Shown one piece after another: positions 39,755 through 50,891 of a stretch of 64,000 bases of DNA. Each line of letters opens with the position of its first letter. Positions within the stretch are counted from its first letter, which is position 1. Source of the DNA: Dimorphilus gyrociliatus. Its lineage: Eukaryota > Animalia > Annelida. The translations under genes were made by a program, and so were the position numbers. The notes beneath the pieces were generated by a model. The model was given only the letters and a program-made list of their open reading frames with translations, did not search any database and had not been told where the DNA came from. The DNA is taken from positions 558,001 to 622,000 of the forward strand of contig CAJFCJ010000023.1 in assembly GCA_904063045.1 (NCBI GenBank), given 5' to 3'.

Positions 39755-41155
39755 AAAAACCTACATCATCTTCTATTACTTTGCTCTTTTAACTGGAAAG
39801 GAAAACGTATCAATTACAAATTAATAATGAAATTTTACGCTGCCATCTTTTTCATTTCTTCTTTCTCTTCCTGTTAGATTTTGTTTGTTTGTTTTAAACA
39901 AAGTTAATTGTTTAACGAAAAGAGTCGTTCGTCTTTGTATTTATGTATTTTATATGTTGTTGTCTGTGTATGCAAGCATTTATTCCTTGTTTGTTTGCAA
40001 TTTTACTAAGAGGGGTAGAGAGAATAAAACTTCTAAATTACTTGACAATGAATTAGTATAATTATTTATCGTTCCATTTTATTTCCACTTCAGGAAACTG
40101 AGGAAAAAGCTTCTCCTCATCGTAAACCATCCATTGAACGAGAAATTGAAGCTTTAAATAAAGAAATGGCTGAAATCGAACTAGAATGCCAGGAAATAGT
40201 AGAAGCACACACCAAATCAAAATTAACTGCTAATACAAGTGCGCCACCTGTTGTTCGTTCTCCTCGCCTTGTTCCTCGTATGGGTACTAGACTAGACTAC
40301 AGCCAAAAGTCACCTCCTCAATTACAACTGAAAGATAATATACTTCGGTTGAAAGAAGATAAAGAAAAAGACACGGAGAATAATAATGAAAATCCCCTTC
40401 CCCTACCTCTTCCTCCTCCTACTCTTCCTAATCCTCCTCCTCCTCTGCCGCCGAGAAAGAAATTACCAAAGTCCAACTCTAGCAACTCTGTTCAATCTCA
40501 GACTCCTTTGGCGGCTGTAAATGATCATTATTCTTCGATTCTACCATTTACCGATGTTATGTATACAAATGAAGCAAATTTGTATCACACCATTGAACTT
40601 CAGCAAACACTATTCCAACAAAAGTTAGAGCGCCATCTGCCGAAAAAAATCGAAGCAACAACAACAACCACTACAACAACCGCAACCATAACAAAAGAAT
40701 ACAGTCCTATCCCAACGCCGCCTCCTCCAGCCCCAACTGACCAAATGGAATGGGTTGTAAAAATGCGGGCTGATGGCACAAGGTATATTGCCAGACGACC
40801 AGTTAGAAATAAAATCCTTAGGGAACGAGCTAAAAGATTAAATTTAGAGAGATCTGGTCTAACAACAGACGATGACGCCGTTTCAGAGTTAAAATTAGGC
40901 AGATTCTGGTCAAAAGAAGAGCGGAAGAGGCAATTAGAAAAGGCGAGAGAGCATAGAAGGAGGAAGCAGGAGGCGGCCGTTCATACGAGGAAAGAGACTG
41001 CAGAAATTGTTCATATGAGTCATAGGAAGATGCTTCGACATAAAGGAAAGAAAATTTTGGACGATTTTACAACAATTCAGGAGGTGTTGGCACACGGCGC
41101 CAGAACAACCGACGCTAGAACATATAATCCCCTTTTATCCGTTACAACTGTATAA
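7878..41155 (+). CDS. PDZRN3/PDZRN4: PDZ domain-containing RING finger protein (PDZRN3/PDZRN4, LNX family)
   Basis: Exons: 7869/7878-8360 (RING ...[11 protein letters not shown]...CPNRC plus TRAF-type Zn finger), 9656-9793 (coiled coil [10 protein letters not shown]), 10010-10045, 17303-17326, 32756-32961 ([32 protein letters not shown]-half of PDZ1), 34150-34228, 34583-34681 ([10 protein letters not shown]), 35621-35683 ([12 protein letters not shown]), 35984-36079 (INGVDV), 37678-37755, 38893-38961 ([14 protein letters not shown]), 40094-41155 ([30 protein letters not shown]-terminal LSVTTV). These motifs match the family as I recall it, and exon phases are compatible. The 10010 and 17303 micro-exons are the least certain. 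Confidence 0.92.
10871..12756. promoter_or_regulatory. Intronic cluster of CACGTG E-boxes (enhancer-like)
   Basis: CACGTG at 10873, 10957, 11200, 11439 (within GTCACGTGAC), 12036 and 12751, interspersed with repeated CTGACAAACT / TGACAAACTGAC. Confidence 0.4.
15242..15361 (+). CDS. Candidate alternative first exon of PDZRN encoding a hydrophobic N-terminal anchor
   Basis: [40 protein letters not shown], then donor CTG|GTAAAT at 15362. Phase 0 is compatible with the 17303 and 32756 exons. Not confirmed by homology. Confidence 0.35.
17866..18005. repeat. Compound microsatellite region: (GA)n, then (GAAC/GAAT)n
   Basis: Visible directly in the sequence. Confidence 0.8.
22071..22140. repeat. 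(CA)n-like tract, then (CT)n microsatellite
   Basis: Visible directly in the sequence. Confidence 0.8.
39699..39750. repeat. (TA)n microsatellite
   Basis: Visible directly in the sequence. Confidence 0.9.
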
Positions 41156-41288
41156 CTAACTATTTTTGGGTGACATGATGAAGTACTTTGATAAATCTCT
41201 TCTTCATATTCGAAACAAGAAAAATAACATTAGCCAATATAAATAACGCGATCTAAATCAGCTATAATGTGAAACTGGACAATTTTTA

Positions 41289-41302
41289 CCGCTAGATGGC
41301 AA
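41289..41302 (+). promoter_or_regulatory. CTCF-like motif just downstream of the PDZRN stop
   Basis: CCGCTAGATGGCAA lies between the convergent PDZRN and DSE genes. Motif match only. Confidence 0.4.
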
Positions 41303-41848
41303 TAGTTCAGCTTTCAATATTTCAGCATAGCTCTCATAGTGAAAATGATAAGAAGAAGAAGAAGAAGAAGAAGAAGAATAGAGGTGGAAAAAATAAACGA
41401 GCCAGCACATACGACTAAAAATTCAAAATGATATTACTAGTTAAAAAATTAGAATATAACAAAAGGGATAAATTTTAGATTTGAACGCAAGCGTTAAATT
41501 AATCAATAAATAAACAAAATGGTTGAATACTTCTTGGTTGAAAAATATCCAGAATTTTCACAGAACTGTTATACTTGATAGGAAAACAAAAAATATATGC
41601 TGCAATCATGGTATTTCATCAAAGAAAAAGAAAAAAAAATGAAAAAAAACAACTGTCACGTCTAATAAATTACAAAGTAATAATACGGCGTTATTTGTAC
41701 AGCTCAAAAAATTGTATTTAATATTTAATATAAAGGAATATTATTAAACAACAAATCAATGCTTTAGATGTGAAATAAAACTATTTTATATTACGAAAAT
41801 ATCGTTTTTATTCCTTAATTGATAGAAACTTTACGAAAAACTTATTAA

Positions 41849-44473
41849 TTATCGAAAATATATATTGAAATTAATTAAACATGATGCTCCTTCGGACGAG
41901 AGGTAAACCGTTACGAGAATACAAACCAACAGTATCGCAATTTTATATATTGTACATCTTCTCTTTAATTTACAATGGAAAGAAGAATAAAATCCTATTA
42001 AAACAGTAACGAGAAGTATCATTTTCGTATATCTCAGTAAGATGGAACATTTGGAAGACTTTATCGCTGCATTTGTAACATTTCTCTTTTTCAACCTCCT
42101 CTCTCTCCTTCTTTTCTTCTGTTGCCTTGACGCCAATCTCTTCGATAACTTCCACGCAATAGTCGTTGTTCGAACGTTAGATCTCCTCGTTACTCTCTGA
42201 TGTTTATTATTAGCACTTATGCTATGTTTCGGTGCAACTTTTTTAACATTGTTGTCTTTAATTGGCTTTGAAAAAAGTACAGTTGCGTTACCATATTTCG
42301 TTATTGCGCAATAATACTTTGTTCTCTGATAGTGAACTGGAATTTGAATTACGTACTTTCCAACATTACTCTCTATCTGTATTTTTATCTCGTTGATTCC
42401 TACGCGTATCTCACTTTTACTTATTGTAATACTTGGTCCTAAAAATCCGTACAAAACGTAGTTCGATAAATTGTTAATGCTAAAAGTTATATTAACATTC
42501 GAGAATGGCTTTCCATTTTCGTACGGAGATTTCCCTGTTCTGAAGGTAGGCATTGGAGATTGGCCATCGGATGAATGCCAATAAAATACATATTTATCCT
42601 TATTTTTCATATGTGCAGCATTGTAACGTAACACTCTTGAATGATAGAATGAATATTCGTAGTTGTTGAAAAACGCTGAAAAATGTTTGACTACTTTCGA
42701 ATTGACTATTCCAAGGTAATCCACTAAAAGTATAAGTTGCGGGTGAAGTGTTATCATTGACCGATAATAGCGTTTAATACCCAAACTTTTAGGATATGCT
42801 CCTGCAGCTTCTCCACTAGTAAATACGAAATTCTTCAACATTCGGCTAACAACTATAGACGCTTGTGAGAAAACAACGTCCTTTTCATTAAAATTAAAGA
42901 AATGACCGCATTCTCCCAATTGGCCAATCCACGGAAATGTACAACTGCGAGGAGGAAATTTTTTACTGCCTTTCTCATACTTGAAGACAAGAGTATTTTC
43001 GAAATATGTCAACTTATTTTGATGAAATCCTCCATGCGATATAAAAGTCTTATTATTCATAACGATCGCAAGACTATTCTGATTTGGATGTTCGTAAAGT
43101 GGACGAAAATGAGACCAGCCGCTCCACCAGTTTATTCGTCCATTTGCCAAACCACTCACTAAATGACCGTGTGGAGGAGACGCCTTGAAGGAGATGTGTG
43201 TAGCGTGTCTGTTAAAAAAGCTATGGGATCTGTAAGTCGATACTCCCCAATCTTGAAAGATGTGATGATTTGGTATTTGAGTTGAAACTCTTTTGCTTGT
43301 AAGAACTGGATCGAACCATAACAATTCGGTAAAAATTGTACCCAAACGATCTCGAAGGTAGCGGGAATGTGACCTCTCGCTTCTTATGAGACCGGCCATA
43401 AAAGTTCCCTGACCGTTCTTCATTGCAAAAGTATCGATAAAAAGGAGTTGAGCTTCGGGACCGTATAACCAAGATAATTGGGAATCTCCAATGCAAATAG
43501 TTCTATCTCTACTTGGTAGAGTTGTATGATAAAATAGATTCAGTTGATTACGTAGCCATCTATTTGTAAAATGATGCTTGAATTGAAAATGGCGATTAAT
43601 CAAAAAGATATACTGAGTGAGACTTTTTGTAAAAAGGCTATTAGACGAAACGCTCTCGCCATTTGTTCCATCGCCAATGCCTTCCAACAATTTTATAGAA
43701 TATTCCATCTTCTTCATACAATCCAGTCTCCATTGTCGGACAGAAGGTTTATGTTTCTCTAGAAAGAGGCTTGTCACGAATACAGAAACAATATTCGCTG
43801 TTGAGTTACTTTGTATTAGATCGTTTCCCCAGGGTTTTTTATTCATATTCACGTTTATTTCTTTGAGTGTATTGAATATTCTATTTATGTACACTGTTCT
43901 TTCGTCGGTCGTTAGCGAATTCCATAGGAAATCAACAGCCAAAGTAAAGCCCAGCATATTATTGGCAATTGGAAAATCGTTTGATAACTGCTTCGTATAT
44001 CTCCAAGAGGGAATGTTGTTCATCAGACGAATAAATGTTTTAGTGAACGCTATGGCTTTACCGTTTGGTTTCAAGAGGCAGTAGAAAGCTAAATCTATTA
44101 GATTATTTCCATAATCTTCGTTCCATTCGGAACCGAATTTTCTAATGTTGGCCGGAGGTAAATAAACTTTGCTGTTGTTGATTATTCTTTGTGCAGCCTT
44201 CTCTAACTTGTGAAAAATGACCTTATGGGTTGACTTTATAGACTTTTGAAGATGTCTTACGTCCGTTACATTAAAGAACAAGAACGGATGGTTTAAATGT
44301 CTACTAGACCTATTGAAACCTTTCATATATGTCTTAATATTAGTATGAAAATTATCTAGTAGTCTTGCATAAGGTTCTATGTTTGATTGATAAGCGTTTA
44401 GTTGACATTTTCCTTCTCTTAAATGAACATTAATAATTATATAGAAGCATAGAAAAGAGATGAAAGAATTCAT
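41849..44473 (-). CDS. DSE: Dermatan sulfate epimerase homologue, 874 aa, single coding exon, catalytic residues degenerate
   Basis: Uninterrupted ORF with true ATG at 44473 (the track starts at an upstream TTG). Signal peptide; DSE motifs HPFLFF, WNEDYGNNL, YGPEAQLLFID, TELLWFD, FQDWGVSTY, EHPNQNS, PWIGQ, GEAAGAY, LHPQLILLVD; two C-terminal hydrophobic segments as in DSE, with no sulfotransferase domain as in DSEL. Probable 5'UTR intron at about 44476-44545. Confidence 0.92.
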   Translation of the reverse strand: MNSFISFLCFYIIINVHLREGKCQLNAYQSNIEPYARLLDNFHTNIKTYMKGFNRSSRHLNHPFLFFNVTDVRHLQKSIKSTHKVIFHKLEKAAQRIINNSKVYLPPANIRKFGSEWNEDYGNNLIDLAFYCLLKPNGKAIAFTKTFIRLMNNIPSWRYTKQLSNDFPIANNMLGFTLAVDFLWNSLTTDERTVYINRIFNTLKEINVNMNKKPWGNDLIQSNSTANIVSVFVTSLFLEKHKPSVRQWRLDCMKKMEYSIKLLEGIGDGTNGESVSSNSLFTKSLTQYIFLINRHFQFKHHFTNRWLRNQLNLFYHTTLPSRDRTICIGDSQLSWLYGPEAQLLFIDTFAMKNGQGTFMAGLIRSERSHSRYLRDRLGTIFTELLWFDPVLTSKRVSTQIPNHHIFQDWGVSTYRSHSFFNRHATHISFKASPPHGHLVSGLANGRINWWSGWSHFRPLYEHPNQNSLAIVMNNKTFISHGGFHQNKLTYFENTLVFKYEKGSKKFPPRSCTFPWIGQLGECGHFFNFNEKDVVFSQASIVVSRMLKNFVFTSGEAAGAYPKSLGIKRYYRSMITLHPQLILLVDYLGIVNSKVVKHFSAFFNNYEYSFYHSRVLRYNAAHMKNKDKYVFYWHSSDGQSPMPTFRTGKSPYENGKPFSNVNITFSINNLSNYVLYGFLGPSITISKSEIRVGINEIKIQIESNVGKYVIQIPVHYQRTKYYCAITKYGNATVLFSKPIKDNNVKKVAPKHSISANNKHQRVTRRSNVRTTTIAWKLSKRLASRQQKKRRRERRLKKRNVTNAAIKSSKCSILLRYTKMILLVTVLIGFYSSFHCKLKRRCTIYKIAILLVCILVTVYLSSEGASCLINFNIYFR

Positions 44474-46208
44474 TTCTGTCAAAATAAAGAAACAAAAAGA
44501 TATTAATCTTAGAGTAAAGTAAAACTAACAGTAAATCATTTTACCTTGCACTGCTATGTGGCATAAAAGTAGTTTTTAAGGTTAAATAAAAGAATATTCA
44601 AGAATACAAAGAAAAGGGCCTATACTCAAAGAATCAATACGTCTTGATTGTTGAGAGGGAGACAGGGTTTTCATATTTTAGTTCGTCAGCTAATACTCTC
44701 AATCAATGGGGCATGTAGAGAGAGGAAAAGGCAACAAACTCAGAAGATTTTTAGGCCTAATCACTATCTTTTGTTTGAACATTTAAGGTTATAGACTCAT
44801 TCAGAGAATAATATTCTCTAGAATTTACATTAAATAGCGTTTCATGTTCAGAAATCTAGGAAATAGACTTTAAACAACTCCAAACACTTCAAATAATTGT
44901 ATTAAAACAATTATAAATGAATATAAAGTCTTTATAAAACTTTATACGAATTCAATTATTATAAAAGTAGTCAACATTAATGAAAAAAAAACTGTTTAAA
45001 ACATAAAATTCTTTATTTCCTTTATTTCTTTTACCATAAAATTAAATGGCTTGTAAAAAAAAATTCATATTTTTATATAATAAAGAATTATTCGAGAGAC
45101 TTTTGTTTTGTTTTTGATATTTTACAGTACATTGTTTATAATTTTTAATGATTAAGTTGAATTTCTGTTTGAGACCTTTGTTCAAAGGCAATTAATTCAC
45201 TTTTTGGAATCTTTTATACCTTCGAACAACAAAGATTCTTCTGCCAGAATAGTTGAAAGACCAAAAAATAAAAACGGAAAATGTTTTAGACTACGCAATT
45301 AAGAGATCAATAGTTTATTGGAAAAGAAAAACGGCGATCAAAAGACACCTCAATCTGCCACCAATTGATAAATAGATACTTGAAAGAGAGAGAAAGAGAG
45401 AACATATAACTATTTAATGAAAAAGTTGTATATGAACAACATATTAAAATTTAGTCTAAAATAAAATATTTCAATTTAATGTTTAAATTTTCAAAGAAAG
45501 GAAGAACTGTAATAAAAGTTAAATAAAGTATATTTCACAGAAAATTCTCGCATACAAAAAGAGCATAAAAAGAGAATTCTGAAGTGAATCGGTGAAGTGG
45601 GATTATTGGAGCACATTTATATATATATATATATATATATATGCATATTTATAACTGTTTTTTTTTATGTCCAAGTCGCAACCATTCCAATCAATATCTA
45701 CACATATGCTTTAACAATCGTCTACTGCACAGCCAAATCATAAGCCTTTATTATTTCAAAGTTTCGGTTGCAATTTTTTTTTTAATTTTTTTTTTTGGAA
45801 AAGTATACTTAATTACTGTTCAATTCTCTTTTATTGAATAAAACACTTTATATAGAACTTAAAAGGGTAAGTGATTTTATTATTTTATAATTTTACTTTA
45901 CTAACCCTAACCCTTCTACAATTACCTTTCCTTTTTTGATGCTTACAATCGCCGACAATTTTGACAAAACTAAAGAAATTCATATTAAAAGTCCAAAAAA
46001 TGTACTTTGCAATTTGAGTATGTGCTTACTGCTGTTTGTTACAGTTACTTCTTTTTTTTCGCCGCCATACTGTATGATATATACAGTGTGTAGAGTAATG
46101 TCAAGTCGTCATTTAATCAATAACAATTACTGTAAATTATTAGTTGTTTTGTTACTGAAACTATCATTTTTATTATTAAAAATAACAGAGGGAGATAAAG
46201 GACAATAA

Positions 46209-48381
46209 ATGTTTCGACCTATCAAATCGAAATTTGTTTACTGCTTGTCAGTTGTTGTTTGCCTGACATTGTTACTAGTTATTCTCAAAATTCGCAAATA
46301 TGACGTTACTGTAAATAATTTAATGATTAAATTTGAAGATAAATTACCTAATAGACTTACTAGGCAAATTATCCCACAAGATAAGAGCAACGAAACTGCT
46401 CTGCAGAGTAAGTAAAACTATTCTCACTCTTTTCTGCTGTAACAAATTCACTTTGAAAATAGAAAGTTCCTGGGATACGATAAATGAAGAAATCGCCAAA
46501 AAATATTATAATGACGTTTATTTGAAATTCTGCAATAAAATCGTGGACTCTTACGATATTTCCAGTAACGTTTGCGATTGCGATCCGGAAGAGAAAGGTA
46601 CGTCATCAATTTTTCTATAATACATAATTTATTCTTCCTTTTAGTACATTGTTTTTTACACTTTCTCCTTCTAATTGTGCGCAGAACATAGATGCAAAAT
46701 TGATTATAATGCAAAAAATGAGGATTGGTCCATTATTAATAAAAGACACGCAATTATTTCACATGGAGGAGAATTCAAGCCCACAAACTGTAATTCCATT
46801 CAGAAAGTTGCTATAGTGATCCCTTATAGAAATAGATTGGAACATTTAAAAATTCTCATCAATCATTTCCATAGAATATTATCGAAGCAAAATATTCATT
46901 ATAAAATTTTCATCGTTGAACAGGCTCATCCTTTTCTCTTCAATAGAGGTGCAATGATGGATGTAGGTTATTCTGAAGCGAAAGCCAACTTTGCCCCCGA
47001 TTGTATTATATTCCACGACGTTGATATGATACCAGAAGATGGAAGGCATATGTATAATTGCCTCCAATCACCAAGACATATGGGTGCTTACCTTAACAAA
47101 TACAAATATATTCAAATCTGTAATTAAGCAACATTAATCAAATTATCCAAACATATCACATCATTATAAAGTTTCTTTATAATTATTACATTAAGTAGAA
47201 ATCAATTAACTCGAACATTGCGTCTATTAAAGTTGATAACAATTGTTAATGTTGCTTATGATTGTGTAACAAAGACCAAACCCTTGGAGGAATTCTAGCT
47301 ATGAAAACTACCGACTTTGAAAGGGTCAATGGATTTCATACACTTATGTATGGTTGGGGTGATGAAGATGTAGATATGATGATTAGGTAATTAAATAATT
47401 ATACCAGTTATACTCTGCGTTTAATTATTATATATCAATTATTTGATTAAACTCTCACTCTCGCTCTATACTTTCTTTTTCAGATGCAAAAAAGCCAAAT
47501 ATACAGTTGTCAAGTGGCCAGTGCCTCTTTCTAGGTACATAATGATCAAACATGAAAGAGACGTAGGCAATCCACTTAATAACTTCAGGTTTATACTTGA
47601 ATTAATAATCTACCAGTTGTTTATACGATTAAATTCATCTTTTAGAAAGTCGTTCCTATCGCATTATTCTGGACGGCATAAGCTATCAAGTCAAGTGTAT
47701 GGTATATCATCGTTAAAGTACAATGTTAATTGGGTTAAACAGAATCCATTGTTTACACACATATCAATAAATTTAAGTATGTTGTAATTTAATTATTCTC
47801 TTAAAACATTCTTTATCTCTTGTTTTCCTTTCTCTATAGCTATATACATAAACTCTTTCTACAATAAAAAGAAAGCCTCTTGCAATATAAAGGAGGCGGG
47901 AGGCTCCTATAAAAACAATCTTTCAGACGAAGATTGTGCAATCACCTGTTTCAACGAAGCACTCTGCTATGGATTTCTTAGATTGGGTAACGTTTGTTAT
48001 ACATTTTCAAAGTTTTGTCCTCCTGAAAGCGACCAACCAACGGTTTTCTATTACGAAAGAAAGAAATCAGGTATAAGCATTTAATACTTTTCCTATAGTG
48101 ACCAAAATAGATTAAATAGTTTGTCTTTTATTCTTTTCTTTCTAGATTTTCAATCTTTAAACAAGTTCCGTAGAATTAAAGGAAGTTGTGTCCATAAGAA
48201 TTTTGGACAAGCTAGTCAATACACAATCTTTGTGTGTTCGGATTTATGCTTACACGATAAGCAATGCCAATCATTTACATACGAAGCGAAATCTGCTTAT
48301 CCTTGCCAAAGAAAGAAAGTTAAATGTTTGAAAAGCTCTATGAAAATGGTTACAGGAGCCATTACATTTGTTAAGAAATAG
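46209..48381 (+). CDS. GT7 beta-1,4-galactosyl/GalNAc-transferase-like protein, paralogue 1, with two C-terminal PAN/Apple domains (first PAN exon frameshifted)
   Basis: Type II TM N-terminus; VAIVIPYRNR, FNRG, FHDVD, SPRHM, GWGDED and MIKH motifs. Exons 46209-46407, 46463-46597, 46685-47119, 47275-47386, 47484-47588, 47646-47776, 47840-48070, 48146-48381. As assembled, a +1 shift gives a stop at 47911-47913. Confidence 0.88.
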
Positions 48382-48659
48382 ATAAAAGTTTAGATATATT
48401 GATAATTGAAACATATTTAATTACATTGAAGTATATTTAAAATTGTATAAAGCTTATCCATGAAATGTTATAACTTTGTTATAAGACTTTTCAATATGTC
48501 TTGCTTTACAAATACAATTCAGTAAATATGCATACTCGGTAGACAGTATAATTCATTCTTTATTCGATAGTTGAACCTTCACTGTTTGGGCCATAGTTAC
48601 CCATTTGACTGCAATAAATGTTTCATCTAGAGCATATGGAGGAGAGTAGGTGAATTGCC

Positions 48660-50751
48660 ATGCCTTTGATAAAGAAAACAGGATTATTACCTTGCTTTTC
48701 ACTGCTCTGTGTTACCCTTTTATTAATTAATTTATTTTATTATTATAAACATCAAAGATCACGTGATAGATTAACGCGAAAGGAAATGTTTAAAATTACT
48801 GGACAACCTAAAATATATCAATATCAAACTAATACATTGAAACATACGAACAAGAAAGGTACTTTATTGTCTAAATAATCTGTTTTTAATAATAACCTTT
48901 CCTGATACTCTCTATTTCTTTACAATATTAGTAATAGAGAAAAGATTTTGGTCAAAGGACGACGCAGAAGTTGCAATGGCATATTATAAAAATACATATT
49001 TAAAAACTTGTAATATATTCATGAAGAGATTGGCCAATAAAAGTAGTATATGTGATTGTGATCCAAAACTTAAAGGTATCTTTTCCATTTTTTTCATTTC
49101 TTTTAAATAATACTTTTAATCAATTAACATAATCATCTGCTGTATTATCGTTACTTTGTATTTAGGCCATAAAGCCATTGTTGATTATAATGTTAGAAAT
49201 TATGATTGGGTAAATATTGACAAGAAACATCTCAATATCCATCTTGGAGGAGAGTTTAAACCGAGCCATTGTAATGCAATTCAAAAAATTGCCATAGTCA
49301 TCCCTTATAGAGATAGAATGGAACATTTAAAGATACTTGTTAATCATTTACATAAAGTGTTACCGAAGCAAAATATTCACTATAAAATTTTTGTTATTGA
49401 ACAATCGGCTCCACTTCTGCTCAATAAGGGAGCAATCATGAATATTGGATATTTAGTCGCTCAACAATACTTCGTTCCTGATTGCATCATTTTCCACGAC
49501 GTTGATATGTTATTAGAAGATAAAAGGCATATGTACAATTGTATTCAATCACCTAGGCATATGGGTGCTCATGTCGACAAATTCAACTACACCCAATTAT
49601 GTAATTAAGTAGAATGTTTTGTTTAAAAGTCCATCGTACAATTGTTCTTTCTCAACATACTTTTTCTTCTAAAGATAAGAACGTTGGAGGAGTATTTGCA
49701 ATAAAACCGCATCAATTCAGAAAAGTCAATGGTTATCATATACTATTCTACGGTTGGGGTGATGAAGATATGGACATGCTACAGAGGTAAACTTTTCCAT
49801 TCTTGAAATATAACAATTTTTCAATTTTCTCCTTCTTCGTTACTAAAGACTCCTCATATCTCGATTGATACCAGTAAAGTGGCCTGTTCCCCTATCTAGA
49901 TATTCAATGATAAAACATTCGGCAGACGTTTTCTATCCAAAAAATCAATTTAGGTAAACAATTTTACAAGTGTTTGTTTGTTGTCTTTTTGATTTTAACA
50001 AACTTGATTATCTAGAAAATCATTTCTCATGCACGAATCAAATTATCATAAATTATCGTATCGAGATTACGGTCTCTCTAAACTCAAGTATGGCGTGAAC
50101 TGGATTAAAAAATGTAAACTTTTTACCCATCTCCTCGTCAATTTAAGTATATAAATTAATAACATTGAATAATTAATTTTGTTTGAATGAGTATCATTTT
50201 CCCAGCCATTTATCAGAATGTATTCTTCAATAAAAAGAAAGGATATTGTGATAACAGTCGAAAAAGGATAATATTTCACAAAGTGAAAACGCTTGAAGAT
50301 TGCTCGATCAAGTGTATCAATATTATATCATGCAATAGTATTGTCATGGGACCGAACAATACATGTTATTCATATACCAATTCATGTAATTCTTCTGGTA
50401 AAGTTCAAACAACATTTCTAGAAAGAAAGCCAGAGTGTAAATAATTTGATTTTTAACTTTAATCGTGAGAATAAAAATAATTCTACTGTCCTCTTTTCAG
50501 TCTTTAAAGCCCTAAATTCGTTCTACAAAGTGAAGGGAAGTTGCTTAAGACGTAGACAGGATAAAATTGGACAGTATTCGTTAATTGTTTGCGTCGATTT
50601 GTGTTTAGAAGATGAAAAGTGCAAAGGCTTTGTGTTTAACGCGCAAAACATAGGTCCCTGTCTAAGATTAATGAATAGAATATGCGATAAAGACAAACTA
50701 CAAGGAATTGATGATACTGTTATGTATATTAAAAAGAATCCTTTTTATTAA
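48660..50751 (+). CDS. GT7 beta-1,4-galactosyl/GalNAc-transferase-like protein, paralogue 2, with two C-terminal PAN/Apple domains
   Basis: Type II TM N-terminus; IAIVIPYRDR, LNKG, FHDVD, SPRHM, GWGDED and MIKH motifs. Exons 48660-48858, 48932-49075, 49166-49600, 49675-49786, 49849-49953, 50016-50146, 50206-50436, 50501-50751. Exon and phase structure is the same as paralogue 1, indicating a tandem duplication. Confidence 0.9.
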
Positions 50752-50891
50752 AAATCTCAATTAAACAAGAAACAATGTTATTCTTATTTCTCTGTATTTT
50801 ATAAAATAGTTTGTTATTTTTCAGTATTCCTCCTCCTTTTCGATATAAAATAAGTATTGATATTATCATATTTGTCTTTATAAGCGTTTGT

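What the first reader, a model, noticed from the sequence alone, without database searches (positions are those of the whole stretch)
43094..43807. Full-length DSE homologue with all three catalytic residues replaced: candidate pseudo-epimerase
Seen: an intact 874-aa ORF with a signal peptide and DSE scaffold motifs. Established: human DSE catalysis uses His205, Tyr261 and His450 (motifs WGFQYLHNH, EGVAY, AGHEHPDQNS, recalled from memory). Here the aligned segments read WGNDLIQSN (His205>Asn, codon 43807-43805), ESVSS (Tyr261>Ser, 43645-43643) and PLYEHPNQNS (His450>Tyr, 43096-43094). The His of PLAHS also becomes Asn. Inference: the ORF is maintained but cannot do DSE chemistry, so it may be a non-catalytic glycan-binding or scaffold subunit in the Golgi, or have a new activity.
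Basis: partly seen in the sequence, partly recalled or inferred. Interest (0 to 1): 0.72.

Follow-up and report, generated by a model that had tools for sequence, protein, structure and literature searches.

The report
Catalytically dead dermatan-sulfate epimerase homologue
A small marine worm keeps an intact, selected gene for a protein that has the shape of the enzyme that makes dermatan sulfate but has lost every residue that does the chemistry, so it most likely now binds sugar chains rather than modifies them.

Summary
An intronless 874-codon ORF (41849-44473, minus strand) in Dimorphilus gyrociliatus (annelid) is a true homologue of human DS-epimerase 1 (6HZN, E 2e-100). Its model matches 6HZN at TM 0.86. 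His205, Tyr261 and His450 are Asn, Ser and Tyr at exactly the codons named. Tyr473, His153, His203 and two of the three Mn ligands (Glu470, Asn481) are also replaced. Trp98 and His452 are kept. These residues are invariant in 80 intact animal DSE/DSEL proteins and mostly conserved in bacterial relatives.

It is not decaying. The closest relative (P0003, 38% identity, from another very AT-rich genome) is also an intact intronless ORF. It lacks the same residues and shares 12 of 19 derived replacements. dN/dS is about 0.2, with dS saturated.

The scan noted the same thing twice on other contigs of this genome. I confirmed that two further D. gyrociliatus paralogues (P0065, P0081) are also catalytically dead. 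I found no intact copy, but the check was not exhaustive.

Best reading: a membrane-anchored pseudo-epimerase of the secretory pathway that is retained for a non-catalytic, probably glycan-binding, role. Expression and function are untested. No paper describing DSE pseudoenzymes was found.

The parts
44402..44473 (-). N-terminal hydrophobic stretch (residues 1-24), a likely signal peptide or signal anchor
   Evidence: sequence and hydropathy only; no signal-peptide predictor run; low pLDDT helix
42380..44305 (-). Epimerase-like domain (residues 57-698): alpha/alpha toroid followed by beta-sandwich, aligned to 6HZN residues 38-685
   Evidence: E 1.9e-100; pLDDT mostly >90 here; 6HZN E 5e-48, TM 0.86 by target
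44123..44125 (-). Trp117 = human Trp98 (substrate-stacking Trp), retained
43961..43963 (-). Asn171 at the position of human His153 (PLAHS motif; 100% His in intact homologues)
43805..43813 (-). Gln221-Ser222-Asn223 at the positions of human His203-Asn204-His205; His205 is catalytic
43643..43645 (-). Ser277 at the position of catalytic Tyr261
43088..43096 (-). Tyr460-Glu461-His462 at human His450-Glu451-His452: His450 replaced, Mn ligand His452 retained
42998..43036 (-). His480 at Mn ligand Glu470; Phe483 or His484 at catalytic Tyr473 (the alignment differs by one residue between HMMER and MAFFT, and neither gives Tyr); Glu492 at Mn ligand Asn481
   Evidence: residue roles from PMC8006597
42050..42256 (-). 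Basic, predicted-disordered linker (residues 740-808)
   Evidence: (pLDDT < 50)
41885..42028 (-). Two C-terminal hydrophobic helices (about residues 816-836 and 843-863), matching the two C-terminal transmembrane segments of human DS-epi1
   Evidence: Kyte-Doolittle; helices 805-833, 837-860; human topology from PMC8006597
41760..41799 (-). Short block in the 3' flank (71-110 nt after the stop) shared with the 3' flank of the orthologue-like gene in L002: 19 nt exact, 41 nt at 83%
   Evidence: function unknown, belongs to the gene only by position

Best explanation
The gene encodes a pseudo-epimerase: a descendant of an annelid dermatan-sulfate epimerase that keeps the whole architecture. That architecture is an N-terminal hydrophobic leader, a luminal alpha-toroid plus beta-sandwich domain, a basic linker and two C-terminal membrane helices. 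It has lost the machinery that abstracts and re-adds the C5 proton of glucuronic acid (His205, Tyr261, Tyr473, His450) and two of the three Mn ligands. It therefore cannot convert GlcA to IdoA. Purifying selection maintains it, which implies a non-catalytic job. I infer that it still docks chondroitin-type chains in the remodelled cleft, where the stacking Trp98 and many cleft-lining residues are kept or conservatively fixed. In the secretory pathway it would then act as a chain-binding or chain-shielding factor, or as a partner of other glycosaminoglycan enzymes, much as heparanase-2 relates to heparanase. Shown: homology, fold, loss of the residues, conservation of the losses in a second species, and constraint on the ORF. 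Inferred: membrane topology, compartment, glycan binding, and absence of any epimerase activity.
For: Homology to 6HZN at E 1.9e-100. AF2 model with mean pLDDT 83.5 and top structural hit 6HZN at E 5e-48, TM 0.86. Atlas neighbours are chordate DSE clusters. Replacements were read from the DNA and reproduced by two alignment methods. Roles of the residues: mutagenesis and structure in PMC8006597, and PMC5784981. His205, Tyr261, His450 and Tyr473 are 100% conserved, and His452 nearly so, in 80 intact animal homologues; they are largely conserved in bacterial DUF4962 relatives. The nearest relative P0003 (E 1.5e-177, 38% identity, full length) is an intact ORF in a different genome. It has Ser/Ser/Ile at 205/261/450, Trp98 and His452 kept, and 12 of the 19 invariant positions changed in both carry the same derived residue. 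P0001+P0003 form a clade with support 99-100 and a long stem of 1.4-1.5 changes per site. NG86 gives dN 0.61 and dS 2.77 over 846 codons. An 874-codon ORF in 36% GC DNA would not stay open without selection.
Against: No direct evidence of expression. The only public run holding the gene is of unknown kind, and contig depth cannot rank genes. No biochemical data. dS is saturated, so the ratio is rough. Twelve shared derived residues in the former active site could equally mark a new, conserved catalytic pocket. His452 and the EH..NQNS motif are retained. In this protein the metal site reads His/His/Glu, which could still bind a metal.
Confidence: 0.7

Rival explanations
1. Neo-functionalised enzyme: the cleft has been rebuilt for a different reaction on a polysaccharide (for example a lyase-like, hydrolase-like or other modifying activity), using new residues.
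For: The fold family is versatile, covering epimerases and PL8/12/15/17/21-type lyases. Twelve of the 19 invariant positions changed in both P0001 and P0003 share the same derived residue, for example Ser204, Ser258, Ser261, Arg447, Asn454, Met462, Asn464 and Tyr488. His452 is kept. In P0001 the metal triad reads His/His/Glu.
Against: The positions that would have to carry new acid/base chemistry are not conserved between the two orthologue-like proteins: 205 Asn/Ser, 450 Tyr/Ile, 473 His/Ser, 153 Asn/Lys, 264 Leu/Ala, 470 His/Pro-or-Gly, 481 Glu/Asp. The related lyases use the same His/Tyr set that is lost here. The two other paralogues of the genome have yet other residues there.
Confidence: 0.15
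2. Still an active DS-epimerase: the alignment is locally wrong, or neighbouring His/Tyr residues substitute.
For: There is a Tyr at the His450 position and a His at or next to the Tyr473 position, a possible swap. The one-residue ambiguity around 473 shows that local alignment is not perfect.
Against: Three methods (phmmer, MAFFT, hmmalign) agree at 205, 261 and 450, with conserved anchors on both sides (W-G before 205, D-G-S/T..E before 261, E-H-P..Q-N-S after 450). There is no His within the 203-205 block and no Tyr in the 257-264 block. The swap is absent in P0003. Mutating single residues of this set abolishes activity in the human enzyme.
Confidence: 0.04
3. A decaying retrocopy or pseudogene that happens still to be open.
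For: The gene is intronless and the clade sits on a long branch. All three catalytic changes are single-nucleotide changes from His/Tyr codons.
Against: An intact 863-codon counterpart exists in another genome at 38% identity with synonymous sites saturated and dN/dS about 0.22. 56 of 81 family-invariant scaffold residues are kept. The model is confident. Being intronless is normal here: P0065, P0003 and P0018 are intronless too.
Confidence: 0.02
4. Non-catalytic regulatory subunit that pairs with an active DSE paralogue (Fam20A/Fam20C style).
For: This is a general precedent for pseudoenzymes in the secretory pathway (PMC5865150, listed). The architecture, including the membrane anchors, is retained.
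Against: The two other DSE-family proteins of D. gyrociliatus also lack the catalytic residues. None of the intact annelid-clade representatives I could trace comes from this genome. That check is not exhaustive: about 30 representatives were not traced, and clustering at 50% could hide one.
Confidence: 0.08

Closest known systems
Human dermatan-sulfate epimerase 1 (DSE, DS-epi1; PDB 6HZN; EC 5.1.3.19) and DSEL/DS-epi2
   Same: Homologous over the whole epimerase domain (about 29-32% identity, E 2e-100). Same predicted fold (TM 0.86 by target). Same overall layout: leader, luminal domain, two C-terminal membrane helices. Trp98, His452 and 56 of 81 family-invariant residues are retained.
   Different: His153, His203, His205, Tyr261, Tyr264, His450, Glu470, Tyr473 and Asn481 are all replaced. 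There is no sulfotransferase domain, so it resembles DSE rather than DSEL. It sits on a long branch within an annelid-containing clade.
Intact annelid DSE homologues (Owenia fusiformis CAH1784677.1 = P0010 and P0179; Capitella teleta ELU04192.1 = P0005; Lamellibrachia satsuma P0199)
   Same: Same phylum, similar length (about 800-850 aa), same clade in the C20 tree (13-row set, support 97).
   Different: The Owenia proteins keep His205/Tyr261/His450/His452/Tyr473 in full. The Lamellibrachia fragment keeps His450/His452/Tyr473 in the part that aligns. Capitella keeps Tyr261/His450/His452/Tyr473, but its 203-205 block is ambiguous. The window protein is only 28-29% identical to them.
P0003 (863 aa; Logan assemblies of SRR23372228 and SRR23372229; organism not identified)
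   Same: Nearest relative (38% identity over the full length). Intronless. Same set of lost catalytic residues. Shares derived residues in the cleft. Has a short shared block in the 3' flank.
   Different: Different residues at 205, 450, 470, 473 and 481. Even more AT-rich DNA. Whether it is an orthologue or an old paralogue is not settled.
Heparanase-2 (HPSE2), the catalytically inactive homologue of heparanase
   Same: Works-like analogy only: a GAG-processing enzyme fold that has lost catalysis and is retained (PMC12406646 abstract). That it acts as a GAG-binding antagonist is my own knowledge.
   Different: Unrelated fold and family (GH79). Here no active partner enzyme was found in the same genome.
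Bacterial heparinase II/III, alginate lyase PL15/PL17 and DUF4962 proteins
   Same: Same two-domain fold (Foldseek E 1e-21 to 1e-13). The family-wide His/Tyr/His/His/Tyr set is shared between these and active DSEs.
   Different: 11-14% identity. They are lyases and keep the catalytic set that the window protein lacks.

Membership tests
DSE/DSEL protein family (homology) | Significant sequence similarity across the epimerase domain | tested here: met
   6HZN E 1.9e-100 over residues 57-698; 163 relatives at E<=1e-10
DSE/DSEL protein family (homology) | (alpha/alpha)6 toroid plus beta-supersandwich fold | tested here: met
   AF2 model pLDDT 83.5, pTM 0.79; 6HZN top hit, TM 0.73 by query and 0.86 by target; Atlas TM 0.74
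DSE/DSEL protein family (homology) | Leader peptide and two C-terminal membrane helices | tested here: inconclusive
   Hydropathy and model helices fit; no dedicated predictor was run
Chondroitin-glucuronate 5-epimerase (EC 5.1.3.19, the enzyme) | Catalytic His205, Tyr261, Tyr473 (and His450) | tested here: not met
   Asn, Ser, His or Phe, and Tyr at these positions; roles from PMC8006597
Chondroitin-glucuronate 5-epimerase (EC 5.1.3.19, the enzyme) | Mn2+ site His452/Glu470/Asn481 | tested here: not met
   His kept; Glu470>His; Asn481>Glu. A metal could still bind, but the site is not conserved in P0003
Chondroitin-glucuronate 5-epimerase (EC 5.1.3.19, the enzyme) | GlcA to IdoA conversion on chondroitin | not testable with these tools
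   Needs a tritium-release or disaccharide assay
Pseudoenzyme | Homologue of an active enzyme lacking residues essential for its catalysis | tested here: met
Pseudoenzyme | Maintained by purifying selection (not a pseudogene) | tested here: met
   Intact ORF in two genomes at 38% identity; dN 0.61, dS 2.77; 69% of invariant scaffold columns kept
Pseudoenzyme | Expressed as RNA and protein | tested here: inconclusive
   One run of unknown kind holds the gene. The contig over the gene has depth 80, against 17 for the upstream intergenic contig and 407 and 142 for the neighbouring genes. The tool warns that depth cannot rank genes
Pseudoenzyme | Non-catalytic function demonstrated | not testable with these tools
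   Needs binding assays and a knock-down

The most novel reading that the evidence does not exclude
In the dinophilid lineage the whole DS-epimerase family has been turned into non-catalytic proteins. D. gyrociliatus keeps three expressed, selected pseudo-epimerases (on contigs 23, 19 and 1) and no active one. The animal therefore makes no iduronic acid, yet retains the DSE fold as a small family of membrane-anchored chondroitin-binding proteins with a new regulatory role in matrix or GAG assembly.
Probability: 0.3. Interest if true: 0.65.

Novelty: new variant of a known kind. Interest (0 to 1): 0.52.

Why it matters
[quoted passage not shown] Their catalytic set is invariant in the intact animal homologues and largely kept in bacterial relatives. 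A conserved, catalytically dead branch shows that the fold has a selectable function beyond epimerisation. It also gives a natural 'all catalytic residues removed' variant for separating chain binding or complex formation from catalysis. The 2020 structure paper found DS-epimerase orthologues only in chordates, a hemichordate, echinoderms and cnidarians. Here intact homologues appear in annelids and a choanoflagellate, and dead ones in an annelid (and possibly a sponge), which widens the evolutionary picture. If D. gyrociliatus really has no active copy, it is a tractable small-genome animal in which to ask what dermatan-type modification is needed for.

Tried and rejected
- Pfam scan of the protein gave nothing at E<=1. 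This is uninformative, because the only relevant model (PF16332) barely detects even gar DSE at 32 bits.
- The three word-index protein searches were nearly useless for this divergent protein. The protein itself and an 8-sequence alignment each returned only P0001 and P0002. The search with P0003 returned only distant (<=31% identity) intact DSE/DSELs and no closer member of the dead clade.
- I first took the two equal-length 3.4-kb Logan contigs carrying P0003 for transcripts. Their ends are an A-run and a (TA)n repeat, so they are genomic contigs broken at simple repeats and give no evidence of expression.
- I tried to identify the organism behind SRR23372228/9 through the paper library and found no hit.
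- I tried to show expression from run X1. Its kind is unknown and only contigs are held. The uneven depth (407/80/17/142) hints at RNA but cannot be relied on.
- The FastTree placement of all four dead proteins at the base of animals is a likely long-branch artefact, so I rejected it. The C20 trees put P0001+P0003 among annelid sequences but do not resolve their relation to P0065 and P0081 (support 86-91, branches >4).
- P0050 (a 593-aa ENA fragment with Gly261/Lys450) looked like a member of the dead clade. It groups with intact P0014, so it is an independent case.
- Amino-acid composition (FYMINK/GARP) used to pick possible D. gyrociliatus proteins did not discriminate well.
- The His/Tyr 'swap' at positions 450/473 as a rescued active site was rejected because P0003 lacks it.
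Full report
**What is there.** The window is AT-rich eukaryotic DNA (GC 0.28-0.37). The finding lies in one long ORF on the minus strand. It runs from ATG 44473-44471 to TAA 41851-41849 and encodes 874 aa without introns. An exact-sequence look-up places the gene on contig CAJFCJ010000023.1 of assembly GCA_904063045.1. A genome paper names that assembly as Dimorphilus gyrociliatus, a miniature annelid (PMC10212961). Upstream are two GT7 glycosyltransferase genes. Downstream, tail to tail, is a PDZ-domain gene.

**Check of the observation.**
- phmmer against all PDB sequences returns a single hit: human dermatan-sulfate epimerase 1 (6HZN), E 1.9e-100, over residues 57-698.
- Chain index plus 22 gives human numbering. 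I verified this with gar DSE (P0165), whose HNH, GVAYG, GHEHPDQ, TEALYG and LNN motifs start at 203, 258, 449, 469 and 480.
- The printed alignment shows five replacements. His203 becomes Gln and His205 becomes Asn (LHNH against IQSN). Tyr261 becomes Ser (EGVAY against ESVSS). His450 becomes Tyr with His452 kept (GHEHP against LYEHP). His153 of PLAHS becomes Asn.
- MAFFT on 57 homologues and hmmalign to a profile of 18 intact DSEs give the same assignments.
- Contigs of one public run cover 41654-44973 without a single differing letter. That run may be the assembly's own sample.

The structure paper (PMC8006597) proposes His205/Tyr261/Tyr473 as the catalytic triad. It places His450 on the substrate carboxylate through a water, names His452/Glu470/Asn481 as Mn ligands, and identifies Trp98 as a stacking residue whose mutation removes about 90% of activity. 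In the window protein:
- Tyr473 is His or Phe. The two aligners differ by one residue, and neither gives Tyr.
- Glu470 is His and Asn481 is Glu.
- Trp98 and His452 are kept.

**Is this more than chance?** Among proteins from the exhaustive search, 80 intact animal DSE/DSELs define 81 columns that are at least 93% conserved.
- The window protein keeps 56 of these columns.
- The 25 it has lost fall in four blocks (147-155, 204-205, 254-264, 447-473). These are the active-site motifs and include every catalytic position.
- Scaffold residues (Trp139, Asp163, Trp197, Asp252-Gly253, Arg278-His279, Trp289, Trp318, Gly321-Pro322, Gln325-Leu326, Cys494, Gly500-Gln501, Tyr545, Arg556, Asp570, Asn648) are all retained.
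- The His/Tyr/His/His/Tyr set is also present in most bacterial DUF4962-type relatives in the list. Its loss here is therefore exceptional within a very old family.

**Fold and architecture.**
- An AlphaFold2 model built on a 46-sequence alignment has mean pLDDT 83.5, mostly above 90 from residue 60 to 735.
- Foldseek against the PDB puts 6HZN first (E 5e-48, TM 0.86 by target). Bacterial alginate lyases, heparinases and GAG lyases follow.
- The ESM Atlas neighbours are chordate DSE clusters.
- Residues 740-808 are basic and disordered.
- Two hydrophobic helices at about 816-836 and 843-863 match the two C-terminal membrane segments of human DS-epi1. The N-terminus has a short hydrophobic leader.
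- The topology is inferred. No signal-peptide or TM predictor was available.

**Relatives.**
- The exhaustive profile-free search found 354 relatives, 71 of them below 1e-30.
- By far the closest is P0003: 863 aa, 38% identity over the full length, E 1.5e-177.
- P0003 comes only from Logan assemblies of two runs, SRR23372228 and SRR23372229. The contigs end in an A-run and a (TA)n repeat, so they are genomic. The gene is intronless there too, and the DNA is still more AT-rich. I could not identify the organism.
- P0003 has Gln203, Ser205, Ser261, Ile450, His452, Pro or Gly at 470, Ser473, Asp481 and Trp98. It has lost the same machinery.
- Nineteen invariant columns are changed in both proteins. 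Twelve of them carry the same derived residue (Asn147, Ser204, Ser258, Ser261, Ser304, Arg447, Asn454, Ile460, Met462, Asn464, Tyr488, Ile566). The former catalytic positions themselves differ.
- The simplest reading is that inactivation happened once, on the long shared stem. The stem is 1.4-1.5 changes per site and the clade has support 99-100. Since then the remodelled cleft has been conserved, but not as an acid/base site.

**Selection.** A codon alignment of the two genes (846 codons) gives NG86 dN 0.61 and dS 2.77. Synonymous sites are saturated, so the ratio of about 0.22 is rough, but it is far from 1. Independently, two ORFs of more than 860 codons in DNA where about 7% of random codons are stops could not both stay open over that divergence without selection. 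The pseudogene reading is therefore rejected.

**The rest of the family in this genome.** The scan's index showed two other first-stage notes of 'DSE homologue lacking catalytic residues' on other contigs. I found the likely corresponding proteins among the search hits.
- P0065 (CAD5123653.1, 707 aa) is intronless and lies on contig CAJFCJ010000019.1.
- P0081 (CAD5110718.1, 1124 aa) lies on contig CAJFCJ010000001.1. Its gene model carries a C-terminal Ras domain, which is probably a merged neighbour.
- At the positions of His205/Tyr261/His450/His452, P0065 has Thr/Glu/Asp/Pro and P0081 has Arg/Met/Leu/Lys.
- Both sit on very long branches (>4). Their grouping with P0001+P0003 (support 86-91) may be real or may be long-branch attraction.
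- Other annelids have intact copies. These are Owenia P0010, P0179 and P0027, and the Lamellibrachia fragment P0199 in the part that aligns. Capitella P0005 is also intact except for an ambiguous 203-205 block.
- None of the intact annelid-clade representatives whose source I could trace comes from D. gyrociliatus.
- This is not exhaustive. About 30 representatives were not traced, clusters at 50% identity could hide a copy, and I could not search the whole assembly.

**Mechanism.**
- Shown: the protein is a DSE by descent and by fold, lacks all residues known to be needed for C5 epimerisation, and is under purifying selection.
- Inferred: it is a membrane-anchored luminal protein of the secretory pathway that no longer epimerises but still uses the cleft. 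Trp98 and the conserved derived residues suggest it binds chondroitin-type chains or partner enzymes.
- The nearest functional analogy is heparanase-2, the inactive relative of heparanase (PMC12406646).
- A rebuilt active site for a new reaction is possible but less likely, because the candidate acid/base positions are not conserved between P0001 and P0003.
- A role as partner of an active paralogue is weakened by the apparent absence of one.

**Expression.** Not established. The single public run that holds the gene is of unknown kind and is kept as contigs. The contig over the gene (41654-44973) has depth 80. The upstream intergenic contig has depth 17, and the flanking genes have 407 and 142. 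Such unevenness would be odd for plain DNA, but the tool warns against reading depth this way. The published annotation used transcript data and ab initio prediction.

**Novelty.** Full-text searches for DSE catalytic residues, DS-epimerase pseudoenzymes and invertebrate DS-epimerases found no description of catalytically dead DSE homologues. The 2020 survey listed DS-epimerase orthologues only in chordates, one hemichordate, echinoderms and cnidarians. Pseudoenzymes as a class are common, so this is a new variant of a known kind rather than a new category. The interesting extension is that a whole enzyme family may persist in one animal only as pseudoenzymes. That extension needs the whole-genome check listed under next steps.

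**Limits.** All three word-index searches and the one exhaustive search were used.

Noticed in passing
window 41760-41799 (-) and L002 3326-3365 (+): The 3' flanks of the window gene and of its nearest relative in another genome share a 19-nt exact match (TTATTTCACATCTAAAGCA) inside a 41-nt block at 83% identity, although synonymous sites of the coding regions are saturated. The motif is unique in the window and absent from the loci of the two other paralogues. It may be a conserved 3'-UTR element.
   Followed up: partly
D. gyrociliatus contigs CAJFCJ010000019.1:2731661-2733784 (L006 4001-6124) and CAJFCJ010000001.1 (L007 4001-8595): Two further DSE-family genes of the same genome (P0065, 707 aa, intronless; P0081, 1124 aa) also lack the catalytic residues. 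P0081's gene model ends in a Ras/Rab-type GTPase domain (residues 944-1097), probably a merged neighbouring gene.
   Followed up: partly
window about 46100-50800 (L001 3723-8265): Two tandem GT7 (beta-1,4-galactosyl/GalNAc-transferase type) genes lie directly upstream of the DSE-like gene, so three glycan-related genes sit within 9 kb. The scan already noted them as GT7 fused to PAN/Apple domains. Any functional link is untested.
   Followed up: no
proteins P0050 (ENA, 593 aa), P0079/P0084 (Sycon ciliatum), P0163/P0162 (Triplophysa DSEL), P0171 (Danionella), P0018 (Logan SRR32924703): Other DSE/DSEL homologues show partial or full loss of the catalytic set. P0050 has Gly261/Lys450/Ile473 and groups with an intact protein. 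The sponge proteins have odd residues at all positions, at low identity, so the alignment is uncertain. The loach DSELs have Phe261. P0018 has Gln452/Lys473. Loss of catalysis may have happened several times in this family.
   Followed up: partly
protein P0069 (Salpingoeca infusionum, eukprot): A choanoflagellate protein with the full His205/Tyr261/His450/His452/Tyr473 set appears among the hits. This bears on the question, raised in the 2020 structure paper, of where the animal enzyme came from.
   Followed up: no
window 40200-46100, run X1: Contig depths of one public run differ 25-fold between adjacent single-copy stretches (407, 348, 80, 17, 14, 142). That would fit an RNA library or uneven amplification. 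The run's kind is not on record.
   Followed up: no
window 43617-44084 (+): A 155-aa ORF antisense to the DSE-like gene. It has no support and is most likely a by-product of the long ORF opposite.
   Followed up: no
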